A stretch of 64,000 bases of DNA from IMGVR_UViG_3300031951_000001:1-64000; one strand, 5' to 3'; shown: positions 27,378-63,998, counted from the stretch's first letter. Notes: a model not told the origin generated them from the letters alone. Numbers and translations are program-made.

Positions 27378-28193
27378 ATGAATCTGAAAGAAACAATAAA
27401 AAAAATATTAAGGGAAGAGATGAGACCTTATAAAGCAATGAGAAGAACTAGCTTAATTGATAGTGAAATCGTAAGGTTATTAGATATAGTATATTATGAT
27501 AAAAGAATTTGTGGAAGGTATGAGGACGCGGACATGTTTGTTCGTGTTGTAACTGAGGCTGTGGTCGAGAACCTATACTTCAATACATTTTATATGATGG
27601 ATGATACGTCAGAAGAATGGGAGAAATCAGTTGATTTTATATATGATTATATCAAAGATAGCCACGGAAAAAATCTAAAAGATTACTTCAATAATATGTG
27701 TAATGAACGGGTTGAGATAGATGAATCACTAGTAACGGAACAAATCGAAGATTTTGGAGAAAAAACCAAATTAGAAAAATCAGTAATGAGATTTATTAAT
27801 GCGTATCTTAAAGGTAAAGAACTACCTGAAAACTTTTATGGTGTTGTTGCCGACACATTTGGTGGAAAATACGGAGAAGGTTGTACCATCACATTTTTAA
27901 TGAAAAAACCATTCAAAGTACAAGACTCGGATGATTTACAAGAATTGGGGTTAGATGTAAAAAAATTAATCAAAGATTTTTTTTCAGATGAATTTAGATA
28001 TGGTATTAATATATCAACAACTACCGTCGAACACTATAAAGAATTAAAAAATCGTTTCTTTAATAAACAGAAGGGTGAGTTTACTGAAGGCGAAATAACA
28101 GAAAAGTGCTGGCCAGGTTATACACAAAAAGGAATGAAGACAATGTTTGGTAAAAGATACCCAAACTGCGTAAAGAAAACAAAGAAGAATTAA
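27378..28193 (+). CDS. Modular leader-bearing protein with C-terminal CW..Y....K...G...PNCV motif
   Basis: MNLKETIKKILREE leader; internal LVTE and ITE sites; KCWPGYTQKGMKTMFGKRYPNCVKK tail. Confidence 0.7.
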   Translation: MNLKETIKKILREEMRPYKAMRRTSLIDSEIVRLLDIVYYDKRICGRYEDADMFVRVVTEAVVENLYFNTFYMMDDTSEEWEKSVDFIYDYIKDSHGKNLKDYFNNMCNERVEIDESLVTEQIEDFGEKTKLEKSVMRFINAYLKGKELPENFYGVVADTFGGKYGEGCTITFLMKKPFKVQDSDDLQELGLDVKKLIKDFFSDEFRYGINISTTTVEHYKELKNRFFNKQKGEFTEGEITEKCWPGYTQKGMKTMFGKRYPNCVKKTKKN

Positions 28194-28588
28194 TAAACAG
28201 GAGGTTTGTCTCGTTTGGGATAAATTGATACCTCATCAATATCAACTCCAAACTTTTCGCTAACCCAATCGGCAACTATATCTATTACTTTTGTTTCCCT
28301 AATCAAAATCATCTGACGCATTGTGTCGATAATATTAGGATGTACTTGTAACAGTCCATGACCGTAATGTTTTGTCCCTTCACCACCTGGACCCCAATCG
28401 TCGTATTCACCAGTCCCGAAGAAGTAATATGCGATTTTTTCAGAACCTGTATTGGCGAACAATTCAATTCTATATGCGTCAGGATTGTGGGCATTTACAA
28501 TTTTTTTACCATCTGATTCTGAAAACTTCTCATCTAAATAATTGTAGATGATTGAATGTAATTGACCTTGTGTAATAAAGTATCTCAT
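28190..28588 (-). CDS. Paralogue-family member with leader
   Basis: MRYFITQGQLHSIIYNYLD...IVADWVSEKFGVDI. Confidence 0.65.
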   Translation of the reverse strand: MRYFITQGQLHSIIYNYLDEKFSESDGKKIVNAHNPDAYRIELFANTGSEKIAYYFFGTGEYDDWGPGGEGTKHYGHGLLQVHPNIIDTMRQMILIRETKVIDIVADWVSEKFGVDIDEVSIYPKRDKPPVY

Positions 28589-29711: not shown

Positions 29712-29787
29712 TTTAACAAGAACATTAATAAGAATGGGGACTCAATTTGGGTCCCCTTTTTTCTGTATATTAGGTATTTATTATAGT

Positions 29788-31644
29788 ATGAATCTCAAAG
29801 AATCAATTAAAAGAATATTAAGGGAAGAAACCGATATACCACTTAAAATTAGAAGGAGGATTTTACCCAAACTAATTGAAAATGCGTTTCAAACGGCATT
29901 GGACGGTAATACAATGTTGAAAACCAAGCCAGGTTCCATGTTACACAAAGCTTCTTTTATAACGTTCGCAAATTTCGTTATTGATGATATGGTTGAGTAT
30001 ATGGAGGACCAAATAAACATGGATGGAAATTCATATTATTATGGTAATGACGATGCTTATATCGAAGAAGTGAGAAACCCGCTCCTTAAACATTATGGTG
30101 ATAGAATAAAAAAGAGATATGATGATATTGTTGGGGGGGATGTTTTTGAATCAGTATTAGAAGAAACAAATATACCACTCCAAGTTAAAAGGAGGATTAA
30201 TGGTGACTCATTGGCCGAATTAATACATGATATTAAAAGTTTAATTGATTCTGGCTACGATGAGTCAGATGCGATATACGATACGGTAAGACAATTTATC
30301 GCTTCAAAACAATTCAAACTTAACAATGATTCAGAACAATCTTATTGGGATTCATACATTGAAGTGGAAGAACCATTAGTTGATTATCTGAAAAGTAAAT
30401 TGAATATACGAGAGTCCGTATTAAGGGAAGAAACCGAAGAATATAAAGTAAAATTGGTTACAAATATAATCTATACTTTATATGATAATATATCATTTAT
30501 AAAACAATCAACTTTCAACGGAAAACCTTTACTTATAATTTATTTTGACTCTGATGATACTGCAGCAAACATTGAGTCGTGGTTTGATGAAAAAATATCA
30601 AGAGATATTGAGGAATGGACTTCAGGAAATATTGTTGTTTGTCCAGATTGGATATTTAATTGGGATTCGAGAAAGAAAAATGCTGATGTGTTTATAAACA
30701 CTGAACTTATAAAATATGATAACTTGGGGAATGTTGTTAATGAGTCAATATTAAGGGAAGAAATGAGCTCAATGATGAGAAGAATATTCAGAAGGGTTGA
30801 CCCCGAAAAGATGGACGGAATATTCGGAGAAGGTCTTGATACAATGACAACAAGATACATTCAGAACCAACATAATTGGCACGCAATGAACTTAGATAAG
30901 TTTAAGTCAGGTATTGTATCATATGTTATTGTTGATTTATGTATGAAATACTCTGACGTATGTTTTGGAGCTGGGGATTTTTACAACCAAGTATGGGAAT
31001 TCTTATTGAGTCATTATTCGGATGTAATGGAAGAAAGATGGAATGAGATTATGTCGGGAGAGGTTAATGAATCGGTATTAAAGGAAGATAGAAAGGCAAA
31101 AGAAACTATAAGTGATTTGGTTAAAGAGTTTGGTTTGATTAAAACTTCAGATATGGTTGGGTTGTCGATATCACAAATTGTTAAAGTAACTAATATACCG
31201 ATTGATTCAGATACCGCCAACCAAATTTTGGTCGAAATGATGAATAACGATGAATTGAAAACCAAATACAAAGATTTTAATATTCACGCAAGTTCAAATG
31301 ACGTGTTTTATTGGGAAGCAATGGTAAAAACAGGACATTTCCATGATGATATGATTGAAAACATAACAGTTGCGGCAACACCATTTTGGGATGGAGTCAA
31401 ATATACACCTGTTGAAATAGAATGGTATACATTACTTAATTATTATGGGGTAACTGTTTATGAAACATCAGGTGAAGGAAATTTTTATAAAGAACTTAAA
31501 CATCAAACAAATTTTGAAAGTGTTGATGAGTTATTGAATTGGTATGAGGAATTCTATTTACCTGAAGTGTATAATATGGTAATGAATACGTTATTACCAA
31601 AAATGCATAAGTTGGTTGATTACGAAATAAAACAAAGAGGTTAG
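29788..31644 (+). CDS. Five-module leader-punctuated protein (polyprotein-like)
   Basis: Start ATG 29788 after TATTTAT; ILREE then four internal ES(V/I)L(E/R/K)E(E/D) junctions. Confidence 0.7.
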   Translation: MNLKESIKRILREETDIPLKIRRRILPKLIENAFQTALDGNTMLKTKPGSMLHKASFITFANFVIDDMVEYMEDQINMDGNSYYYGNDDAYIEEVRNPLLKHYGDRIKKRYDDIVGGDVFESVLEETNIPLQVKRRINGDSLAELIHDIKSLIDSGYDESDAIYDTVRQFIASKQFKLNNDSEQSYWDSYIEVEEPLVDYLKSKLNIRESVLREETEEYKVKLVTNIIYTLYDNISFIKQSTFNGKPLLIIYFDSDDTAANIESWFDEKISRDIEEWTSGNIVVCPDWIFNWDSRKKNADVFINTELIKYDNLGNVVNESILREEMSSMMRRIFRRVDPEKMDGIFGEGLDTMTTRYIQNQHNWHAMNLDKFKSGIVSYVIVDLCMKYSDVCFGAGDFYNQVWEFLLSHYSDVMEERWNEIMSGEVNESVLKEDRKAKETISDLVKEFGLIKTSDMVGLSISQIVKVTNIPIDSDTANQILVEMMNNDELKTKYKDFNIHASSNDVFYWEAMVKTGHFHDDMIENITVAATPFWDGVKYTPVEIEWYTLLNYYGVTVYETSGEGNFYKELKHQTNFESVDELLNWYEEFYLPEVYNMVMNTLLPKMHKLVDYEIKQRG

Positions 31645-32024
31645 ACGATACGTCCGCTTCTTACATCAAAGACCTTATAGTCGGGGAGCATAGATTCAAA
31701 AGCATCAGAGATAAAGTATTTACCATTGGTCATCCAAACAGGGTGAGGTAACATCTCCTCAAAAAACCCATCATACTTATGGCTGTAGTATAAATCACCC
31801 GTTTTACCATCACTAAAAATAGAAAACATCATCATAGGATTACCGGCTGAATCGTATAGGACAATTCTATTACTATCCTCACTATATGATTCAATCTCAT
31901 CAACAATATAAGGAACGATGATATGTTTAAACTTATTGTATAGGTCCTCATACTCAAAATCCATCCAATGACGTTCAAGTTCGGATATAAGATTAAGTTG
32001 TGATTCGGTGATAAGGTATTTCAT
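31641..32024 (-). CDS. Paralogue array member 1
   Basis: MKYLITESQL leader; own TATTTAT. Confidence 0.75.
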   Translation of the reverse strand: MKYLITESQLNLISELERHWMDFEYEDLYNKFKHIIVPYIVDEIESYSEDSNRIVLYDSAGNPMMMFSIFSDGKTGDLYYSHKYDGFFEEMLPHPVWMTNGKYFISDAFESMLPDYKVFDVRSGRIV

Positions 32025-32036
32025 ATAAGATAAATA

Positions 32037-32372
32037 TTACATTGATAGTTCGGCGTCACCTATCAGACCACCGTATACTTTGACATCCGAAGGTTCAATC
32101 TTACCGGAGTTAGAGTTTTCCTCAACAAAATGGGTGAGAATTAATTCGGCCTCATCCTTATCAATAGAAAAGAATTCACATACACTGTTTATAAAATCTT
32201 CGGATATTATTAAAGTACCTGACCTTCTTCTATACCTCATAACGGCGTGTGTATCGTCTAAAGAATAAACAAAACTTATATAACTTGTCCAATAAACCGC
32301 CTCAAGATTTAGTGAATTAATATAATTAAAAATAATACTGTTTAATTTAGATTCGGTGATTAGGAATTTCAT
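32037..32372 (-). CDS. Paralogue array member 2
   Basis: MKFLITESKLNSIIFNYI. Confidence 0.75.
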   Translation of the reverse strand: MKFLITESKLNSIIFNYINSLNLEAVYWTSYISFVYSLDDTHAVMRYRRRSGTLIISEDFINSVCEFFSIDKDEAELILTHFVEENSNSGKIEPSDVKVYGGLIGDAELSM

Positions 32373-32387
32373 ATAAGATAAATATAA

Positions 32388-32699
32388 TTAATACCCAACA
32401 ATCGGACTGGCAACTTCCACATTAATAGATTTTATTCCGAGTTTATTTTCAATCCATTTATTAATTACATTAATGGAGTCCCCATAATCTAAAGAAAAGA
32501 ATTTGCTAACTTCGTCGACCAAGTCGTAGTGTATTGTACACCAGCGGTCTTTCGGATGATATCTAACTTGAGCATATTCATCATCTTCAGAGTTGACATA
32601 GTATAATCTATTCCCCATTTTAATTACAACGAAGTCCTGATTGTCAAGATACTTAAAAACTATACTATCAAATTTAGATTCGGTGATAAGATATTTCAT
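32388..32699 (-). CDS. Paralogue array member 3
   Basis: MKYLITESKFDSIVFKYLDNQDF. Confidence 0.75.
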   Translation of the reverse strand: MKYLITESKFDSIVFKYLDNQDFVVIKMGNRLYYVNSEDDEYAQVRYHPKDRWCTIHYDLVDEVSKFFSLDYGDSINVINKWIENKLGIKSINVEVASPIVGY

Positions 32700-32731
32700 A
32701 TAAGATAAATATATGTAATATTTATTATCAT

Positions 32732-33157
32732 ATGAGTATTAAAGAATCCATAAGAAGAATATTAAGGGAAGAAACTTTACTTAAAACCAATATAAAAGAC
32801 ATGATTTCCAAACATGGATTTTATATAACGTCCAAAATGTTAGGTGGAGTTGATATTATGAATAGTATTCTTAATATAAAAGGTTCACAGGAAGAAATGA
32901 TTTTCATTGTTAAAGCCATAATGGAACATGATGTTGAAGTTTTGGGTAATGTATGTAACTATCAAATAGTTCCGACCATGTACTCATTTAAACTATATGT
33001 AGAAATACCAAAATATTATCCCAACCATTCCGATGATTATTACCCAAACAAACAAAAAACATTTGAGGCGAGAGATTATATATCTGACTTAATAAAAAAG
33101 TTTGGAAATGAAAAGGTGAGAGGATATAATATATACGTTCAGGTAGGAAATTGTTAA
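32732..33157 (+). CDS. Leader-bearing hypothetical protein
   Basis: MSIKESIRRILREE; TATTTAT upstream. Confidence 0.7.
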   Translation: MSIKESIRRILREETLLKTNIKDMISKHGFYITSKMLGGVDIMNSILNIKGSQEEMIFIVKAIMEHDVEVLGNVCNYQIVPTMYSFKLYVEIPKYYPNHSDDYYPNKQKTFEARDYISDLIKKFGNEKVRGYNIYVQVGNC

Positions 33158-33158
33158 A

Positions 33159-33476
33159 TTAGTCAGCTCCGTAATCAGAGAAGATATAGTCAAAATCAAA
33201 ATCAATTTTGGTTTTAATCCATTCACCAATAATATTCAAAGCGGTCTCCAAGTCCAAACTAAAGAATGATGCGACCTCAACAACTAAATCTGAACTTACA
33301 AAACATTCTTTATTAACACGATTTGTGTTGATTGATATATATCCACCACTTTCCCAACTCTCCTTAGAGTCCCAAAAGACATAACCAGAGTGATACTTCA
33401 TTTTATAAAAGTCCTGGTTATTTAAGTAGTCAAAGACAAGATTAGTAAGTTTAGATTCGGTGATAAGGAATTTCAT
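33159..33476 (-). CDS. Paralogue array member 4
   Basis: MKFLITESKLTNLVFDYLNNQDF. Confidence 0.75.
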   Translation of the reverse strand: MKFLITESKLTNLVFDYLNNQDFYKMKYHSGYVFWDSKESWESGGYISINTNRVNKECFVSSDLVVEVASFFSLDLETALNIIGEWIKTKIDFDFDYIFSDYGAD

Positions 33477-33838
33477 TCGGTTTTAACAATTAATCTGTGA
33501 GAAGACCCACTGTTGATAGTGTTTTCTATTTTACCAACCTTAATACCCAAAGTATCACTAACCCATACTTTTATTATCTCTAAACAATCCAAATCATCAA
33601 TAGAGAAGAAATCAGATAATTCCTTAATTAAATCATAATTCACATATACCCAATTCCTAACAAAACCAAAAGAGTTTATGTGATAAACACTAATCTGAGC
33701 GTAAAGGTCGGACTCATTGTTTAAGAAGTATATGTAGTTGTCAAATTTCTTCTTGTTGTCATATACTATAAAATCCTGATTATCCAAATACATAGACACT
33801 GTATTATACAATTTAGATTCTGTGATTAAGTATTTCAT
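33473..33838 (-). CDS. Paralogue array member 5
   Basis: MKYLITESKLYNTVSMYLDNQDF. Confidence 0.75.
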   Translation of the reverse strand: MKYLITESKLYNTVSMYLDNQDFIVYDNKKKFDNYIYFLNNESDLYAQISVYHINSFGFVRNWVYVNYDLIKELSDFFSIDDLDCLEIIKVWVSDTLGIKVGKIENTINSGSSHRLIVKTE

Positions 33839-33855
33839 ATGATAATAAATATGAT

Positions 33856-34179
33856 TTAGTTAGGTATTACCAACGCATAACCTGAACTCGGAGCAACACC
33901 GATGCTTTCGACCTCCATTTTTATGATATTCTCAACCCATTTAACAATAACTTTATCAAAGTCAGAATCTTGTAAAGAAAAGAACATAGAAATTTCATTA
34001 TATAAATCGTAAGATACGTAACACCGACCATCTTTGTCAAATCTTATTTGAGCATATTCATCTGATTCAGAATTGACAAAGTATATGCTTTCTCTATTTT
34101 TAAACCGAATAAAGTCCTGATTGTCCAAATACTGAAGGATAATACTATCCAATTTAGATTCGGTGATTAGGTATTTCAT
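33856..34179 (-). CDS. Paralogue array member 6
   Basis: MKYLITESKLDSIILQYLDNQDF. Confidence 0.75.
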   Translation of the reverse strand: MKYLITESKLDSIILQYLDNQDFIRFKNRESIYFVNSESDEYAQIRFDKDGRCYVSYDLYNEISMFFSLQDSDFDKVIVKWVENIIKMEVESIGVAPSSGYALVIPN

Positions 34180-57090: not shown

Positions 57091-58179
57091 ATGTTATCAG
57101 ATAAAATTAAAAATATAATATTCGAATATCTTTTAGATGAAATCTATAAAGTTGAGATAATCTATTATCGCGACAGTGTATGGTTTATTGACAGAGAGAA
57201 TCGGTATTGGTATTTTGAATATCACAAAGTGGACAAACACCTTTGGTGGAGATGGTCTCATTTTACCACGGCTCTAACAATGTTTTCAATGGAGGCTGAA
57301 AAGGAACAGTATTTATTAGGTGAACTGGTTAATATGATTTTAACCAAGAAACAAAAACTTGAATCAAAGTATCCAAACAAGATATTCAAGACCGTTGGAA
57401 GTGTTATGAATTTTGGGGATAAGGTGGACGAGGTATTAAATAGCGAGGTAGAAACAACTCTTCATCGAAGGTTAGACCGTCGTTATCAGGTGGATGAGGT
57501 CCTAAATAACGAGGTAGAAACAACTGATGGTTATGGATGGAAACCAAGATTTGTGGTGGATGAGGTATTAAATAACGAGATAGAAACAACGGAAATGCAT
57601 CTCACCCCAAGGCAGTGGAAGGTGGACGATGTATTAAATAACGAGGTGGAAACAACATCCGGGTCTGACATAGCAATATCGCAAGGGTTGGGTGAGGTCC
57701 TAAATAACGAGGCGAAAACAACCGACAAAGTAGGTTCTCAATTCTGCGTAGAGGCGGATGCTGTCATAACTTTTGAGGTTGAAAAAACTAGTCATGGGAC
57801 ACTGATTGATGAAGATAAAATAATAGATGAGGTATTATCAGTTGACATTGAAACAATTGGATATTCAAAAACGCATAGGCTTCGTCCTGTAACAGGAGCA
57901 CTTGATTACAATGATAATCCGATTGAAATAAAATCAATTAGAAAATTAAAAGGTGAAAGTCCCCTCCAAGATGTTATCGTCAGTCAAATTCTTGATGAAT
58001 CAGATAAGGTGACCGACAAGCTCAAGATTAAAGAGGATGATTATGTTAAAACATATAGTCACGATGTTTATATGTGTGACCACCTTGTTCAGAATGTTTT
58101 AGATGTTGGTGTTAATTCAATACATTATGATGCTGAATCACACACTCCACTTATTGACGGAATACTAAAAAAGGCTTAA
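57091..58179 (+). CDS. Paralogue-family domain followed by 22-aa repeats (12 conserved + 10 variable residues)
   Basis: VDEVLNNEVETT repeated; N-terminal domain aligns with the 33856..34179 protein. Confidence 0.8.
   Translation: MLSDKIKNIIFEYLLDEIYKVEIIYYRDSVWFIDRENRYWYFEYHKVDKHLWWRWSHFTTALTMFSMEAEKEQYLLGELVNMILTKKQKLESKYPNKIFKTVGSVMNFGDKVDEVLNSEVETTLHRRLDRRYQVDEVLNNEVETTDGYGWKPRFVVDEVLNNEIETTEMHLTPRQWKVDDVLNNEVETTSGSDIAISQGLGEVLNNEAKTTDKVGSQFCVEADAVITFEVEKTSHGTLIDEDKIIDEVLSVDIETIGYSKTHRLRPVTGALDYNDNPIEIKSIRKLKGESPLQDVIVSQILDESDKVTDKLKIKEDDYVKTYSHDVYMCDHLVQNVLDVGVNSIHYDAESHTPLIDGILKKA
57423..57857 (+). repeat. In-frame CRISPR-like array: 36-nt repeats with 30-nt unrelated spacers
   Basis: Repeats start at 57423, 57489, 57555, 57621 and 57687, with degenerate copies at 57753 and 57822; consensus GGTGGATGAGGTATTAAATAACGAGGTAGAAACAAC. 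Confidence 0.9.
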
Positions 58180-58188
58180 ATTTGTAAA

Positions 58189-59805
58189 ATGAAAGATATT
58201 AACGACCTTCACCAAGAACTTGATGATTTGACTTACCTTAACGCAAAGATGAGAGATGAGGGATTTGATTATTGTTTCCGTCATTATTCATCATTTGAAG
58301 AAATTAAGGATGAGAAGTTTCACGAACTCAGGTTGAAGTACATTCAAATTGCCGAGGAACTTGAGAACTATGTGAACACTCAATATGAATTGAAACAAGA
58401 CGAAATTGATAACTACGAAGAAAAAGATGAAAATTAATATGAATATAACTCGGCATTTTTTTTATGTCTTGTTAACGGTTTTTATTTTATCTGGTTGTGG
58501 AGAATCAGTCAATGAAAAAAACTTTGATATAAGTATGCAGAAAATAAATGGTGAATGGATACGCGAATCACATTCATTACCTGAAGACGCAGATTTTTTC
58601 ATTGACACTTTCAATGGCAGTTATTCATTACGATATATTAGAGGTGAAGGTAATTGTTTTTCCAAAAGAGAGAAACTTGTGAGAAACGGGATTATTGATT
58701 ATAGGATTAATAACTAATAATTACGAATATGAAAATAACATTTGGCGACCTCAAAACAGGGGACAGAATTAAGACAAGATACTCAGGTATGGCAACGGTA
58801 GTTGAAACTGGTTGTTATAAAGGAACAATGGTTAAACTGAAATGTGATACCCCAAAGTGGTGCTGTCCTTATTTTTATGAACACGAATTAGAATTAATAT
58901 GAATAATACAGAAATAACACCGGTACCTGAAATCACCGCCGACACCACAAGAGTATGTGAAATCAGATTTGATTGTTTGGTTACAATGCATGATGTGGGA
59001 TATAGAAAATATGAAGGGATGTGGGGTCAGGAGAAACAATCAAAGACACCACAATGGTTCAGAGCGAATCATAAAATAACACTTGAAAGCGTTAAACACG
59101 CTGACCCATATGAACTTGGGATGAGAATAAAACAAATGTTTCACGAATTAGAAAATACAATTAAAAAATATGAAAACGGAACAACCTATCAAAGTCATGA
59201 ATAAAGAACAACAACAGATTATTGATGAGGTGTATGAGAGATATTGGAGTAGTATTGAAACTTCAGAATATGATGGGATTGGTCCTACATCAATTAAGTT
59301 ACCAACACTAATGAAAGAAGAGTTCATCAACAAATGTAAAACAGACCCAGAGTTCTCTGAAAAGTGGGGGTTGAAGATTTATACCAAAGTAGATGGTGAT
59401 AAGGTTTGGATGGGAATGGTTTATAATGATAATGCTGTTGAAATTAGATTAAAATAGAAAGTTATGAATGAAATACGTAGGCTAATTAAAAAAATTGAAT
59501 ACACACATTATATAGAGTATAAGGGAAAACAATATACTAGAAAAGAAGTTATTATACCAAAGGCTTTTTCTTGGGAAGGTACACCTGATAAACTTGAGGA
59601 TATACATACTATTTCGTGGCAAGATTATGATTATGAGGTTTATCAAAATAATGGAAATATTCATTATTTTAGTTGTGACCACGGATGGGCTAAAAATGGC
59701 GTGATGGATAAATCAAATCCTGTGCCTAAAATAGAAAAATGTTTCAAAAAAACTATTGGTAAAGATTTAATATATTTCAACGAAACAATAGAAAGTTATG
59801 AGTAA
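58189..59805 (+). CDS. Run of hypothetical proteins (58189..58437, lipoprotein 58427..58717, 58899..59204, 59170..59457, 59464..59805)
   Basis: Coupled ORFs; lipobox LSG|C in the second. Confidence 0.6.
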
Positions 59806-61102
59806 AATACAAGTAACACAACCAACATTTCTAATCAATTTAGATAATCCGACAGAAGTTAGTTATGTGCCAATGGAAGGTAATTGGAAATCAATTATAG
59901 TTGAAACATATCAACATGGGTTTCCTGAAATACAAGATGATGAAATTCTTTATGTCTATAAAGAAAATAGAGGTTATATTAAAAAACAAGTTATGACTAA
60001 TACATTAGACAAACAATACCAAGACCTACTCCAAACAATTTTGGATTTTGGTTGTACGAAGAGTGACAGGACTGGAACTGGAACCAAATCAATTTTTGGT
60101 TACACCATCCGTCATAATATGAAAAACGGATTCCCACTTCTTACAACAAAGAAGATGGCGTTTAAAACAATGGTAACCGAGTTGTTATGGTTCTTGAGAG
60201 GTGATACTAACATCAAATACCTTGTTGACAATAATTGTCATATCTGGGACGGAGACGCTTTCAAAAACTACATCAGTAAAACTAATGAATTCAAAGGTGA
60301 TTGGCCGGACACAATGGAAGAATTCATCAACAAAATAAAAACGGATGATGGGTTTGCTAAAAAATATGGGGAATTGGGTTCCATCTATGGGAAACAATGG
60401 AGAAGATGGACTAAAAAGAAAATGTATCTATCAACAGATGGTTCATATGAAAACATTTATGATGAGGCAGACCAAACAGTTATAGACCAAATAGCAATCC
60501 TCATTAACGAACTCAAAACAAACCCAGACTCAAGACGACTAATGGTTTCAGCTTGGAATGTAGGTGAATTAGACCAAATGGTTCTTCCACCTTGTCATTA
60601 TGGATTTCAAGTTTATACAAGAGAGTTGAGTTATGATGAAAAAAGAAACATTTATAATTCAGACCCAATGAGTTATGGAGGTACAGCGTCTCCATTACCA
60701 CCAAATTCTGAAGAAATTAAATTTGACCCCCATCACGCAGAGAAAGATTGGGACAATAATTACGCAAGTAAAAAGATTCCAACCAGAGCAATCTCATTAA
60801 TGTGGAATCAACGTTCCGTCGACACATTATTGGGGCTCCCATTCAATATAGCATCATACGGATTACTATTAACAATAATTGCCAAAGAAGTTAATATGGT
60901 ACCTGATGAATTGATTGGAAATTTGGGTGATACCCATTTATACCTCAACCATATTGAACAAGCAAAAGAACAGATTGGTAGAGAACCATTTGAATTACCA
61001 AATTTAGTAATAGAACATAGTAGTTTAGAGCCGGTTGAATTGGTTTATAAGTTAGAAAACTATCAATCACATCCAGCAATTAAGGCACCACTATCCAACT
61101 AA
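59798..61102 (+). CDS. thyA: Thymidylate synthase with N-terminal extension and insertions
   Basis: DRTGTGT, FPLLTTKK, ELLWFLRG, LPPCH, QRSVD and PFNIASY; core could start at ATG 59993. Confidence 0.95.
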   Translation: MSKIQVTQPTFLINLDNPTEVSYVPMEGNWKSIIVETYQHGFPEIQDDEILYVYKENRGYIKKQVMTNTLDKQYQDLLQTILDFGCTKSDRTGTGTKSIFGYTIRHNMKNGFPLLTTKKMAFKTMVTELLWFLRGDTNIKYLVDNNCHIWDGDAFKNYISKTNEFKGDWPDTMEEFINKIKTDDGFAKKYGELGSIYGKQWRRWTKKKMYLSTDGSYENIYDEADQTVIDQIAILINELKTNPDSRRLMVSAWNVGELDQMVLPPCHYGFQVYTRELSYDEKRNIYNSDPMSYGGTASPLPPNSEEIKFDPHHAEKDWDNNYASKKIPTRAISLMWNQRSVDTLLGLPFNIASYGLLLTIIAKEVNMVPDELIGNLGDTHLYLNHIEQAKEQIGREPFELPNLVIEHSSLEPVELVYKLENYQSHPAIKAPLSN

Positions 61103-62103: not shown

Positions 62104-62857
62104 ATGGAAAATCTATTATTAAAATCAGAACCAGTGGACGCACCTTCTTTTACATTTAGTCTAGAAGAAAAGACAATCATTGTTATTGACTCAAAAGGAT
62201 TTAGTTATAAAGGAGAGTTAATTGAAGATGCCGGAGAAGTGTATAATTTATTTAAAAGTTTTTTGGAACAATCATTAAATAACTACTAAAAATAAAACCA
62301 ATGGCACGCTATAGAGTATTAGAAATCACAGATAAGTTAATTTATAACGGAAGACCATATTGGGTTATTGAAAAAAAAATACTAGGTCTATGGTGGACTC
62401 AGTATTTTGAAGAACATTCAGAGTGGGGAGCAACCTATTATGAAAAAGATAAGGCGATGACCTGGTATGAATATCACTGCGATAATGACTCAAGAATAAA
62501 AACCAAAGTAATTGCTCAAAACAAATGATGGAAGACCTCAAACATAGATGGGAACAAATTGACGAGGACGATTATGTTGCCAAATATCGTGATATGATGC
62601 TCCGAGTTGAAAAGATGGAGGAGCAACAATGGTGGTGGGCGGTTTATAGAGGAAAAGAAGAACTATGTCCCGAGAAACCATTTGCGAGAAAGAAAGATTA
62701 TGCGATGAAGATGGCAGAGGAATGTGCCGAGGAAAACATTGAACCATATGTTTCAGATGATTTTCAGATTGGACCGGATGGTGCGTTTGAATATACTGAC
62801 GATGAAATATCAGAGTGGGACGGAACATTAATGGACGGACTTGAAGAAGAGGAATAA
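62104..62857 (+). CDS. Three hypothetical proteins (62104..62289, 62301..62528, 62525..62857)
   Basis: Coupled ORFs. Confidence 0.6.
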
Positions 62858-63998
62858 GAATATTATTTGGTTAATAATTCTCACATTAAGTGGATTGGTG
62901 TCGCTCGCCCAATGTCCTAACGCAAATTTTGAATTTGGTACCTTTACTAACTGGACTGGTAAGAGAGGAACTTGTTGTCCGATTAATCTACCATTTGTAG
63001 GTATATTGGCAGGTAGACAAACAATTGTAAGTGCCGGACTTGACCCCCATTCTTGTGGGGGACTAAACAGAGTATATCAAGGTAATTTTTCGGCAAGATT
63101 GGGTAATGACCAAAACAATTCAAGAGCCGAAGGGTTGTATTATACATTTACCGTAAGCCCCGCAACAACGTTAGTTCAGTATGCTTATGCTGTTGTTTTA
63201 CAAGACCCTGGACATAATGACGGAGCTCAACCAAGATTCCAATCAAGGGTTAGATTATCTAATGGTAGTATTATACCTTGCACAGAATATGTTGTAACTG
63301 CGGGACCTAACCTTCCTGGTTATAATTATTGTATGGAAAATGATATTTTTGGAAATCCAGTACAGGTTGCTTATAGTGATTGGAGGGTTATTTCAATTGA
63401 TTTATCTTCTTATGTTGGACAAAGTGTTACACTTGAATTTGAGACAGGTGATTGTGATTTAGGTGCTCACTATGGTTACGCATATATTGACGCAATATCT
63501 TGTGGACCAATTGAGACAGAAATTTATTATTGTCAAGCAAGTGACTCTATTTTGATTGAGGGACCTGAAGGTTTTGCAACATATGAGTGGGTTGAAACTG
63601 GTGACACAACAAGGGTTATAACAATTCCCCCATTAGTTTATGATACGTTAAATTTAAATGTTACAACTGTTACTGGATGTGAATTAACTCTCCAAATTAT
63701 TTTGGACCCAATTCCACTTCTTGCAAATATTATTTGTGAGGATGTTTGTTTTCCTGATTCTAATAATTTTATTAATCTTACTCCTACCATAGAAGGATAT
63801 AATGTAAAATTTTTATGGGATTTTGACGACGGAAATATATCTGATGATATATCACCAACTCACCAGTACTTGTCACCAGGTGTTTATAATGTAACAATGA
63901 CCGCAAATGTATTAAATACAAACTGCACGGATATTGTAAATTGCGAGGTTGAGGTCTTCGATATTCCTGTAATTCCTGGAATTATTAGTCACGATTAG
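62841..63998 (+). CDS. Secreted Bacteroidota-type beta-sandwich protein with C-terminal PKD domain
   Basis: Signal peptide SLA|Q; NANFE.GTFTNW, SARLGN and YAVVLQDPGH; WDFDDG..SPTHQY..PGVYNVTMT PKD motif. Confidence 0.8.
   Translation: MKKRNKNIIWLIILTLSGLVSLAQCPNANFEFGTFTNWTGKRGTCCPINLPFVGILAGRQTIVSAGLDPHSCGGLNRVYQGNFSARLGNDQNNSRAEGLYYTFTVSPATTLVQYAYAVVLQDPGHNDGAQPRFQSRVRLSNGSIIPCTEYVVTAGPNLPGYNYCMENDIFGNPVQVAYSDWRVISIDLSSYVGQSVTLEFETGDCDLGAHYGYAYIDAISCGPIETEIYYCQASDSILIEGPEGFATYEWVETGDTTRVITIPPLVYDTLNLNVTTVTGCELTLQIILDPIPLLANIICEDVCFPDSNNFINLTPTIEGYNVKFLWDFDDGNISDDISPTHQYLSPGVYNVTMTANVLNTNCTDIVNCEVEVFDIPVIPGIISHD

What the first reader, a model, noticed from the sequence alone, without database searches (positions are those of the whole stretch)
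57091..57460. The array gene is a member of the 31.6-34.2 kb family, and its repeat is that family's C-terminal motif
Seen by manual alignment with 33856..34179: KIKNIIFEYL/KLDSIILQYL, RDSVWFIDRE/RESIYFVNSE, TMFSM/MFFSL, and the repeat VDEVLNSEVET against VENIIKMEVES without gaps. In single-copy paralogues this motif is followed by a short, highly variable tail. This copy lacks the ITES leader and TATTTAT and lies among host-promoter genes. Inference: the family has a constant body and a variable tip; this gene stacks many tips, either as a multivalent version or as a reservoir of tips for recombination into the expressed paralogues.
Basis: partly seen in the sequence, partly recalled or inferred. 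Interest (0 to 1): 0.72.

Follow-up and report, generated by a model that had tools for sequence, protein, structure and literature searches.

The report
Phage gene stacking hypervariable peptide cassettes
A gene of an uncultured freshwater T4-like jumbo phage is a true but distant relative of a small phage protein family, and it repeats that family's end-piece (a conserved 12-residue motif plus a variable 10-residue tip) seven times in one translated protein whose function is still unknown.

Summary
It is only borderline within the window but solid once relatives are added.

**Evidence within the window**
- BLASTP against one paralogue gives E 0.22.
- The six-paralogue HMM scores the array ORF 13.5 bits, the third-best non-seed ORF of 819.

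**Evidence from relatives**
- The array N-domain profile against the family gives hhalign probability 83%, E 1e-5.
- The family HMM hits 217 of 264 array-type proteins, up to 40.7 bits. That alignment covers the MKxxITES leader and aligns the family's WVEN motif with repeat 1.
- In most relatives the N-domain ends in WVEEVLNxKVxTT, which is itself the first repeat.
- In relatives, array genes sit inside clusters of the single-copy family.

**In the window gene**
- Repeat 0 has decayed to ELVNMILTKKQK, and about 22 residues are inserted before the first clear repeat.

**What the array is**
- It is protein-coding, not CRISPR-like. 476 of 482 repeat cores lie in frame with an N-domain. There is no Cas1, reverse transcriptase, Rfam hit or RNA fold.
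- Spacers are 10 aa long, enriched in R, W and H, and conserved once formed (pN/pS 0.36).
- Cassettes are gained, lost and swapped between relatives.

- "Constant body, variable tip, stacked tips" is supported.
- The "reservoir for the paralogues" idea is not: spacers and tails share nothing.
- Function is unknown. No Pfam, PHROG, PDB or GenBank-phage match was found.

The parts
57091..58179 (+). Array gene, 362 aa: N-domain, 7 motif+tip units, C-terminal region of decayed units. GGAG Shine-Dalgarno at -11..-8, no TATTTAT box, no MKYLITES leader
   Evidence: more than 228 homologues whose lengths differ by about 22 aa
57091..57414 (+). N-terminal alpha/beta body domain (residues 1-108), homologous to the body of the 31.6-34.2 kb family
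   Evidence: AF2 pLDDT about 85, with H4-17, four strands and H73-93. Canonical relative pLDDT 91-96. Profile tests
57322..57357 (+). 'Repeat 0' (ELVNMILTKKQK, residues 78-89): decayed positional equivalent of the family's WVENxLxxxV motif and of repeat 1 of canonical arrays. About 22 inserted residues follow (57358-57423)
   Evidence: MAFFT alignment A3; hhalign register
57424..57459 (+). Repeat 1, VDEVLNSEVETT
57460..57489 (+). Spacer 1, LHRRLDRRYQ (cassette also seen in P0002)
57490..57525 (+). Repeat 2, VDEVLNNEVETT
57526..57555 (+). Spacer 2, DGYGWKPRFV (cassette shared with P0002, P0008, P0011, P0079 at other positions)
57556..57591 (+). Repeat 3, VDEVLNNEIETT
57592..57621 (+). Spacer 3, EMHLTPRQWK
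57622..57657 (+). Repeat 4, VDDVLNNEVETT
57658..57687 (+). Spacer 4, SGSDIAISQG (shared cassette)
57688..57723 (+). Repeat 5, LGEVLNNEAKTT (decaying)
57724..57753 (+). Spacer 5, DKVGSQFCVE (shared cassette)
57754..57789 (+). Repeat 6, ADAVITFEVEKT (63% identical to repeat 1 at DNA level)
57790..57822 (+). Spacer 6, 11 aa
57823..57858 (+). Repeat 7, IDEVLSVDIETI (61% identical to repeat 1)
57859..58179 (+). C-terminal region conserved in this subclade. It holds decayed units (…QNVLDVGVNSI…) and ends in a half repeat (LIDGILKKA*), as canonical arrays do (VEEILNENPTE*, MEQVLNQ*)
31641..34179 (-). Six single-copy paralogues (31641-32024, 32037-32372, 32388-32699, 33159-33476, 33473-33838, 33856-34179). 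Each has the MK[YF]LITES leader, the body domain, a W[VI]E[ND]… motif and a tail of 7-17 aa. TATTTAT lies 5-6 nt before the ATG in five of them
28190..28588 (-). Seventh, divergent paralogue (leader MRYFITQGQL)
   Evidence: HMM E 4.5e-6; TATTTAT box

Best explanation
**Shown**
- The window belongs to a 322-kb T4-like phage from freshwater metagenomes.
- Gene 57091..58179 is a derived member of a large, unnamed, phage-only superfamily.
- The basic unit of that superfamily is a body of about 75 aa (helix, four-stranded sheet, two helices). Its last helix carries W-V-E-E-V-L-N-x-K-V-x-T-T and is followed by a short variable peptide.
- Single-unit members are the MKYLITES paralogues at 31.6-34.2 kb.
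- In array members the 12-aa motif plus a 10-aa tip has been duplicated in tandem, 2 to more than 14 times, and the protein ends in a half repeat.
- The array is translated.
- The motif is strongly conserved, and it is homogenised within each array.
- The tips are unrelated to one another and fixed in length. Each one is conserved once it exists.

**Inferred**
- Arrays change by recombination between the 36-nt repeats. This adds, drops or swaps whole cassettes while keeping their order.
- The product is a flexible, multivalent protein that presents many different 10-residue peptides rich in R, W and H on one body.
- Because it lacks the leader, it acts in the infected cell.
- The single-tip paralogues carry a leader that looks like a T4 capsid-targeting sequence with a prohead-protease site. 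They may be packaged and injected.

The target of the tips is unknown.
For: **Lineage**
- gp23-type capsid protein and gp21-type protease are present.
- The source samples are freshwater.
- The capsid protein is 36-41% identical to those of Mel-JY01, immuto and RM378.

**Homology**
- Profile and HMM tests.
- Structural match.
- Canonical architecture.
- Repeat 1 is part of helix H69-86 of a confidently modelled N-domain.
- In relatives, array genes are adjacent to single-copy members, with up to three in tandem.

**Coding**
- 476 of 482 repeat cores lie in stop-free segments that also hold an N-domain.
- The other five frames carry 4-7% stop codons.

**Repeats and tips**
- Motif logo: V88 E81 E79 V90 L98 N93 x K/E V93 x T79 T85, in percent.
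- Repeat DNA identity is 82% within arrays and 71.5% between arrays, with lineage-specific residues at motif position 7.
- Tips are 10 aa in 221 of 228 distinct spacers.
- R, W and H are enriched 2.3-2.6 fold.
- pN/pS is 0.36 over 74 homologous cassette pairs.
- Cassette maps are collinear, with single gains, losses and swaps.
- Other 29-30-nt spacers occur between the same repeats in co-occurring relatives.

**Leader**
- It occurs on about 16 unrelated ORFs.
- The T4 precedent is described in PMC9026906.
Against: - No function was tested, and no named family, solved fold or cultured phage carries either family.
- The array region is modelled at pLDDT about 25-45. 'Flexible display' therefore rests on absence of predicted structure.
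- The complex prediction gave no answer.
- The window gene's own direct match to the family is weak (7.7-13.5 bits). Membership rests on transitive homology.
- E-values are for databases of about 1,000 sequences.
- The motif regular expressions used to pick units slightly bias the logo and the counts.
- The raised GC3 of the array is unexplained.
- The capsid-targeting role of the leader is an analogy only.
- Some array-type proteins do carry the leader (P0241, P0284, P0381).
Confidence: 0.6

Rival explanations
1. Multi-core peptide precursor or polyprotein. The body acts as a leader or recognition domain. The conserved 12-mers are processing sites. The 10-aa tips, or 22-mers, are cut out as separate peptides, as in cyanobactin or other multi-core RiPP precursors, or by the phage's own gp21-type protease.
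For: - Conserved flanks surround hypervariable cores of fixed length.
- Every core is bounded on both sides, because proteins end in a half repeat.
- The array is predicted to be disordered.
- Each core is under selection of its own.
- 77% of units read [LIVM]-x-E at motif positions 1-3, loosely like the T4 protease motif (PMC9026906).
- A gp21-type protease is encoded.
Against: - No maturation enzyme lies next to array genes in 15 loci examined. Only ORFs with matches in this genome were recognised there.
- The most invariant residues (L5, N6, V9) are not explained by a [LI]-x-E site, and P3 is V rather than L or I.
- The array gene lacks the leader that would take it into the prohead, where gp21-type proteases act.
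- The motif is a structural helix of the body in its first copy.
Confidence: 0.2
2. The tips are neutral linkers. The conserved helices are the functional elements, for instance multiple docking sites, and the 10-aa segments merely space them.
For: - There is no similarity among tips, and they have odd, nearly flat codon-position GC.
- Spacing is fixed.
Against: - pN/pS of 0.36 within cassette families shows constraint on the peptide sequence.
- The R/W/H enrichment is not what neutral AT-biased drift would give.
- The same cassettes persist across genomes whose N-domains differ by 15-50%.
Confidence: 0.1
3. Silent reservoir of tips that recombine into the expressed single-copy paralogues.
For: - Motif homology would allow such recombination.
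- The gene lacks the family's promoter-like box and leader.
Against: - Spacers and family tails share no more identity than shuffled controls (611 x 90).
- The frame is kept open through all spacers.
- The gene has its own Shine-Dalgarno sequence.
- Orthologous tails are stable.
Confidence: 0.04
4. A CRISPR-like or other non-coding repeat-spacer array, with the ORF an accident. The geometry (36 + 30 nt) fits, and from memory the repeat end GGTAGAAACAAC recalls Cas13b repeats.
For: - Period of 66 nt, spacers with no similarity to one another, decay at one end.
- Collinear spacer order among relatives.
Against: - Repeats are only 61-88% identical, and their differences are largely synonymous.
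- The frame is open across hundreds of spacers.
- No Rfam repeat family matches.
- The repeat RNA does not fold.
- The genome has no Cas1 and no reverse transcriptase.
- No protospacer occurs in the genome or in 110 loci.
Confidence: 0.01
5. Chance resemblance: the array gene is not related to the paralogue family.
For: Direct tests within the window are weak.
Against: - Reciprocal profile hits through many intermediates.
- Full-length collinear alignment that includes the leader in P0284.
- Tandem adjacency of the two types in eight relatives.
- Structural hits.
Confidence: 0.04

Closest known systems
T4 internal proteins (IPI, IPII, IPIII) with the capsid targeting sequence
   Same: - A T4-like phage with a gp21-type protease.
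- A plastic cluster of small, fast-diverging genes that share a short N-terminal leader ending in [LI]-x-E (MKYLITE|S against T4 MKTYQEFIAE|).
- The leader sits on unrelated proteins.
   Different: - There is no sequence homology to the T4 internal proteins.
- Packaging and cleavage are untested.
- The array gene itself lacks the leader.
- T4 internal proteins have no repeat arrays.
gp38-type tail-fibre adhesins of T-even phages (conserved glycine-rich motifs alternating with hypervariable segments); from my own knowledge, not tested here
   Same: - Short conserved motifs alternate with hypervariable segments in a T4-like phage protein.
- The conserved motifs are thought to serve as recombination points that reshuffle the variable segments.
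   Different: - No homology and no glycine-rich motifs.
- The gene is not in a tail-fibre module.
- Copy number varies, and segment length is strictly fixed here.
Multi-core RiPP precursors (for example cyanobactin PatE-type); from my own knowledge
   Same: An N-terminal constant part is followed by several hypervariable cores of fixed length, each flanked by conserved recognition sequences. Cassettes differ between otherwise similar genomes.
   Different: - Here the constant part is a folded domain of about 80-108 aa whose last helix is the repeat.
- No processing or modifying enzymes were found nearby.
- The source is a virus.
- No released peptide is known.
CRISPR arrays
   Same: Geometry only: 36-nt repeats, 30-nt unique spacers, conserved spacer order with gains and losses, decay at one end.
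   Different: - It is translated in one frame.
- Repeats diverge at synonymous sites.
- There are no cas genes, no repeat RNA structure and no protospacers.

Membership tests
MKYLITES small-protein family of this phage lineage (31.6-34.2 kb paralogues; no Pfam or PHROG entry) | Alpha/beta body domain detectable by the family profile | tested here: met
   - Direct match is weak: 13.5 bits, i-E 0.0043.
- Array N-domain profile against the family: hhalign 83%, E 9.6e-6.
- The family HMM hits 217 of 264 array-type proteins, up to 40.7 bits.
- The reciprocal search also hits.
MKYLITES small-protein family | C-terminal W-[VI]-E-[ND]-x-L-x-x-x-V motif after the FFSL helix, followed by a short tail | tested here: met
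   - It is present as decayed 'repeat 0' at residues 78-89 and as seven further copies.
- In canonical relatives the motif is repeat 1.
- A single-copy member carries the strict repeat motif.
MKYLITES small-protein family | N-terminal MK[YF][LI]ITE[SQ] leader | tested here: not met
   The array protein starts MLSDKIK. Some array-type relatives do carry the leader (P0241, P0284, P0381).
MKYLITES small-protein family | TATTTAT box 5-6 nt before the ATG, and a place in the tandem cluster | tested here: not met
   Upstream there is GGAG and no box. The gene lies 23 kb from the cluster. In eight relatives array genes are inside such clusters.
CRISPR array | Near-identical non-coding repeats with cas genes or a known repeat family | tested here: not met
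Diversity-generating retroelement target | Reverse transcriptase plus a template repeat matching the variable region | tested here: not met
   There is no RVT_1 match in the genome. Spacers have no near copy elsewhere in the genome.
Multi-core RiPP precursor | Repeated variable cores between conserved recognition sequences | tested here: met
   (architecture only)
Multi-core RiPP precursor | Cognate processing or modifying enzymes encoded nearby; peptide released | tested here: inconclusive
   No enzyme was recognised beside array genes in 15 loci, but most neighbours are unknown ORFs. Release cannot be tested with these tools.
T4-type capsid-targeted internal proteins (applies to the single-copy paralogues) | N-terminal propeptide ending in a gp21-type site, with a gp21-type protease in the genome | tested here: met
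   The leader ends I-T-E|S. Peptidase_S77 matches at E 1.5e-25. The motif is described in PMC9026906.
T4-type capsid-targeted internal proteins | Presence in virions and cleavage of the leader | not testable with these tools
   This needs virion proteomics. No cultured host or phage is available.

The most novel reading that the evidence does not exclude
The array genes are a virus-encoded 'peptide library'. Each 10-residue cassette would be an individually functional peptide, released or displayed. Cassettes would be exchanged between phages through the flanking repeats. This would be a protein-level counterpart of multi-core RiPP precursors, and in its bookkeeping a counterpart of CRISPR arrays. 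The single-tip paralogues would be the injected, one-peptide versions. The family has about 400 clusters at 50% identity in freshwater and marine phages, so it would be a widespread and unrecognised phage system.
Probability: 0.2. Interest if true: 0.85.

Novelty: new variant of a known kind. Interest (0 to 1): 0.62.

Why it matters
Two abundant phage protein families are shown to be one superfamily with a simple building rule: body, motif, tip. One has more than 1,000 clusters at 90% identity. The other has about 400 clusters at 50% identity. Neither has any annotation.

The array members show an unusual mode of protein evolution: an in-frame repeat-spacer layout. In it:
- the repeats are homogenised within each array;
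- the spacers behave as discrete, selected, exchangeable cassettes;
- synonymous-site composition differs sharply from the rest of the genome.

The finding gives a concrete handle on a block of 'dark matter' in large freshwater T4-like phages, through cassette maps, leaders and promoter boxes. It also suggests testable roles in host takeover or anti-defence. In addition, it warns that CRISPR finders and gene callers can misread such loci.

Tried and rejected
- Tandem Repeats Finder found nothing, because the unique spacers break the tandem identity. The repeat finder did find the family.
- Pfam, PHROGs, ESM Atlas, Foldseek against PDB and AFDB, and VIA-align wide gave no named family or convincing fold. 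The best Z was 4.6, to MCM N-terminal domains, which is below the tool's own noise level.
- tblastn of the array protein, a canonical array protein and a paralogue against 50,697 GenBank phage records gave no match.
- The CRISPR reading was rejected.
- The diversity-generating-retroelement reading was rejected.
My tail extraction was imperfect: many 'tails' began upstream of the motif.
- Spacers against the phage's own genome and 110 loci gave only other arrays.
- The complex prediction of the array protein with paralogue 33856-34179 returned 'no answer' and is not evidence either way.
- My first stop-codon counts were circular, because units were taken from open frames. I replaced them with the frame-independent test.
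- The sigma-70 scan around the gene gave 40 sites against 28.5 ± 5.5 in shuffles, with none convincingly placed. 'Host-promoter genes' was left undecided.
- In read laying the data were contigs only, and the runs labelled RNA were probably DNA. There is no expression evidence.

Full report
**Setting**

The window is the first 64 kb of a single 322,372-bp virus record with 34% GC. The record encodes a gp23-type major capsid protein (PF07068, E 1e-64) and a gp21-type prohead protease (PF03420, E 1.5e-25). The capsid protein is only 36-41% identical to those of Microcystis phage Mel-JY01, Flavobacterium phage immuto and Rhodothermus phage RM378. Near-identical DNA occurs in freshwater and lake metagenomes. 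This is an uncultured, deep-branching T4-like jumbo phage.

**The object**

ORF 57091..58179 (+) encodes 362 aa. It has three parts.
- An N-domain of about 108 residues.
- Seven units with a 66-nt period. Each is a 36-nt repeat encoding V-D-E-V-L-N-x-E-V-E-T-T plus a 30-nt unique spacer. Repeat identity to the first copy falls from 88% to 61% towards the 3' end.
- About 100 residues that contain decayed units and end in a half repeat.

**Check of the observation inside the window**

The statistics within the window are borderline.
- BLASTP against 33856..34179 gives E 0.22.
- An HMM of the six paralogues, searched against 819 ORFs of the genome, scores the array ORF 13.5 bits (domain i-E 0.0043). 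It is the third-best non-seed ORF, aligned over HMM positions 9-92.
- hhalign gives E 1.4e-3, probability 18%.
- The 11-mer match between the repeat and VENIIKMEVES scores 25 in BLOSUM62. Five of 119,426 genome 11-mers do as well.
- A PSSM built from 369 repeat units ranks that paralogue's motif 13th of 117,321 windows. The other five paralogues rank 100-1400.

**Relatives settle it**

The array protein has more than 228 metagenomic homologues, and their lengths differ by about 22 aa. The paralogue family has more than 1,000. A profile of 22 array N-domains finds 396 clusters at 50% identity in 1.84 billion proteins.

In most of these, and in 110 fetched loci, the N-domain ends in s-W-V-E-E-V-L-N-x-K-V-s-T-T. 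That motif is already the first repeat. Arrays of 2 to more than 14 units follow directly, and the protein ends in a half repeat such as VEEILNENPTE* or MEQVLNQ*.

MAFFT places the window's ELVNMILTKKQK (residues 78-89) opposite that first repeat. The window subclade therefore has a decayed 'repeat 0' and then about 22 inserted residues before its clear repeats.

Profile tests improve as diversity is added.
- hhalign gives E 1.1e-4, 5.4e-5 and 9.6e-6 with probability 83%.
- The deep family HMM hits 217 of 264 array-type proteins. The best is P0284 at 40.7 bits, aligned from the MKIIITES leader through WVEEILNCKV.
- The reciprocal search hits single-copy members at 21-28 bits.
- One single-copy member (L021 646-954) ends in VENILNIKVSKT plus nine residues.
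- AF2 models the canonical N-domain at pLDDT 91-96, with repeat 1 inside its last helix.
- Foldseek matches that model to 104-118-aa proteins of an uncultured phage at probability 1.0. I could not read those sequences.
- In eight related phages the array genes lie inside clusters of MKYLITES-type genes, up to three in tandem.

The correction is that the seven repeats are extra copies of the family motif, not its positional equivalent.

**Coding or CRISPR-like?**

The 36 + 30 geometry invites a CRISPR reading. I tested and rejected it.
- Of 482 strict repeat cores found in any forward frame of 110 loci, 476 lie in stop-free segments that also hold an N-domain. Only L115 is broken.
- The other five frames of the spacers carry 4-7% stop codons.
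- Repeats differ largely at synonymous sites.
- There is no Rfam family, no repeat RNA fold, no Cas1, no reverse transcriptase and no protospacer.

**Properties of the cassettes**

- Spacers are 10 aa in 221 of 228 distinct cases.
- They are enriched 2.3-2.6 fold in R, W and H, and depleted in K, T, I and N.
- Cassettes recur in different genomes. Seventy-four homologous, non-identical pairs give pN/pS of 0.36.
- Cassette maps of relatives are largely collinear, with single gains, losses and swaps.
- Repeats are homogenised within arrays: 82% DNA identity within against 71.5% between, with lineage-specific residues at motif position 7.
- Contigs from other samples show other 29-30-nt spacers between the same repeats.
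- The motif logo, in percent, is V88 E81 E79 V90 L98 N93 x K/E V93 x T79 T85.

**An unexplained feature**

GC at four-fold degenerate third positions differs sharply across regions.

| Region | GC3 at four-fold sites |
|---|---|
| Spacers | 0.405 |
| Repeats | 0.359 |
| N-domains of the same genes | 0.257 |
| Long ORFs of the genome | 0.218 |

The differences are significant (Fisher p 5e-16 and 3e-42). Spacer GC is 0.433, against 0.368 expected from the same amino acids with the genome's codon usage.

'Constant body, variable tip, stacked tips' fits.

The tails of single-copy paralogues differ between paralogues but are conserved among orthologues.

The 'reservoir' idea fails. 611 spacers against 90 tails show no excess identity over shuffles, and the array is itself a selected coding sequence.

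The gene lacks the leader and the TATTTAT box. That box lies 5-6 nt before the ATG of five of the six paralogues and of five other leader-bearing genes. The array gene has a GGAG Shine-Dalgarno instead. 'Host-promoter genes' could not be verified.

**How it most likely works**

Shown:
- Membership in the superfamily.
- The origin of the repeats.
- Translation of the array.
- Selection on the cassettes.
- Cassette turnover between relatives.

Inferred:
- Recombination between the repeats drives the turnover.
- The protein is a multivalent presenter of short peptides rich in R, W and H, on a largely unstructured chain (array pLDDT 25-45).
- It acts in the infected cell.

The MK[YF][LI]ITE[SQ] leader heads about 16 unrelated ORFs. 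One of them lies between the protease and capsid genes. The leader resembles the T4 capsid targeting sequence with its protease site (PMC9026906). The array protein begins about where a cleaved paralogue would begin. The single-tip paralogues may therefore be packaged and injected. This is an analogy, not a result.

The main rival is a multi-core peptide precursor. 77% of units read [LIVM]-x-E at motif positions 1-3, but no processing enzyme was found nearby.

**Comparison with what is known**

There is no Pfam, PHROG, Atlas name, PDB fold or GenBank phage match. The closest known designs are these:
- T4 internal proteins, for the leader logic.
- gp38-type adhesins, for conserved motifs alternating with hypervariable segments.
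- Multi-core RiPP precursors, for the architecture.
- CRISPR arrays, for the geometry only.

It is a member of none of them.

**Verdict**

The object is an unannotated, widespread phage superfamily with an unusual in-frame cassette array. Its function is unknown.

Noticed in passing
window 28190-28588 (-): A seventh, divergent paralogue of the family. It has the leader MRYFITQGQL and a TATTTAT box, and scores HMM E 4.5e-6.
   Followed up: partly
window 11611, 26653, 37725, 38497, 41238, 44403 (+) and genome 118104-119060: The MK[YF][LI]ITE[SEQ] leader heads about 16 otherwise unrelated ORFs. One of them lies between the gp21-like protease and the gp23-like capsid gene. The leader looks like a T4-type capsid targeting sequence with an [LI]-x-E protease site.
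   Followed up: partly
window 27378-28193, 32732-33157, 29734-31644 (+); L019, L022, L026, L035, L036: A second leader type, M-x-L-[QK]-E-x-I-[RK]-[RK]-[IV]-L-R-E-E, begins two window ORFs. It also occurs three times inside the 636-aa ORF 29734-31644, which looks like a fusion of modules. Genes with this leader flank array genes in relatives. A third type, (K)IVRLTESDLxRLVKRV, occurs in relatives.
   Followed up: no
window 31.6-44.4 kb, upstream of ATGs: TATTTAT lies at a fixed 5-6 nt before the start codon, with no Shine-Dalgarno sequence, in at least ten leader-bearing genes. Transcripts from it would be leaderless or nearly so. It may be a phage-specific promoter.
   Followed up: partly
window 57424-57858 and arrays of L011-L120: GC at four-fold degenerate sites is 0.41 in spacers and 0.36 in repeats, against 0.26 in the same genes' N-domains and 0.22 genome-wide. 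Spacer GC is nearly flat across codon positions. The cause is unknown.
   Followed up: partly
window 59798-61102 (+): Thymidylate synthase of 434 aa, with an N-terminal extension of about 70 aa and an internal insert that splits the Pfam match into two stretches.
   Followed up: no
window 62841-63998 (+): An ORF running off the window end with a signal-peptide-like N-terminus and a PKD domain (E 8e-9). It is possibly a surface or adhesin-like protein and hints at a Bacteroidota-type host.
   Followed up: no
L022 1711-3983, L025 1203-3286, L026 1014-3226: Three array genes lie in tandem in some relatives, each with its own N-domain and a different cassette set. P0121-P0123 are tandem fusions of two single-copy bodies.
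   Followed up: partly
window 59214-59347: Contigs from two DNA runs skip or replace 74-107 nt here, and depth peaks at 59284-59417. This suggests a variable or repeated element inside ORF 59170-59457.
   Followed up: no
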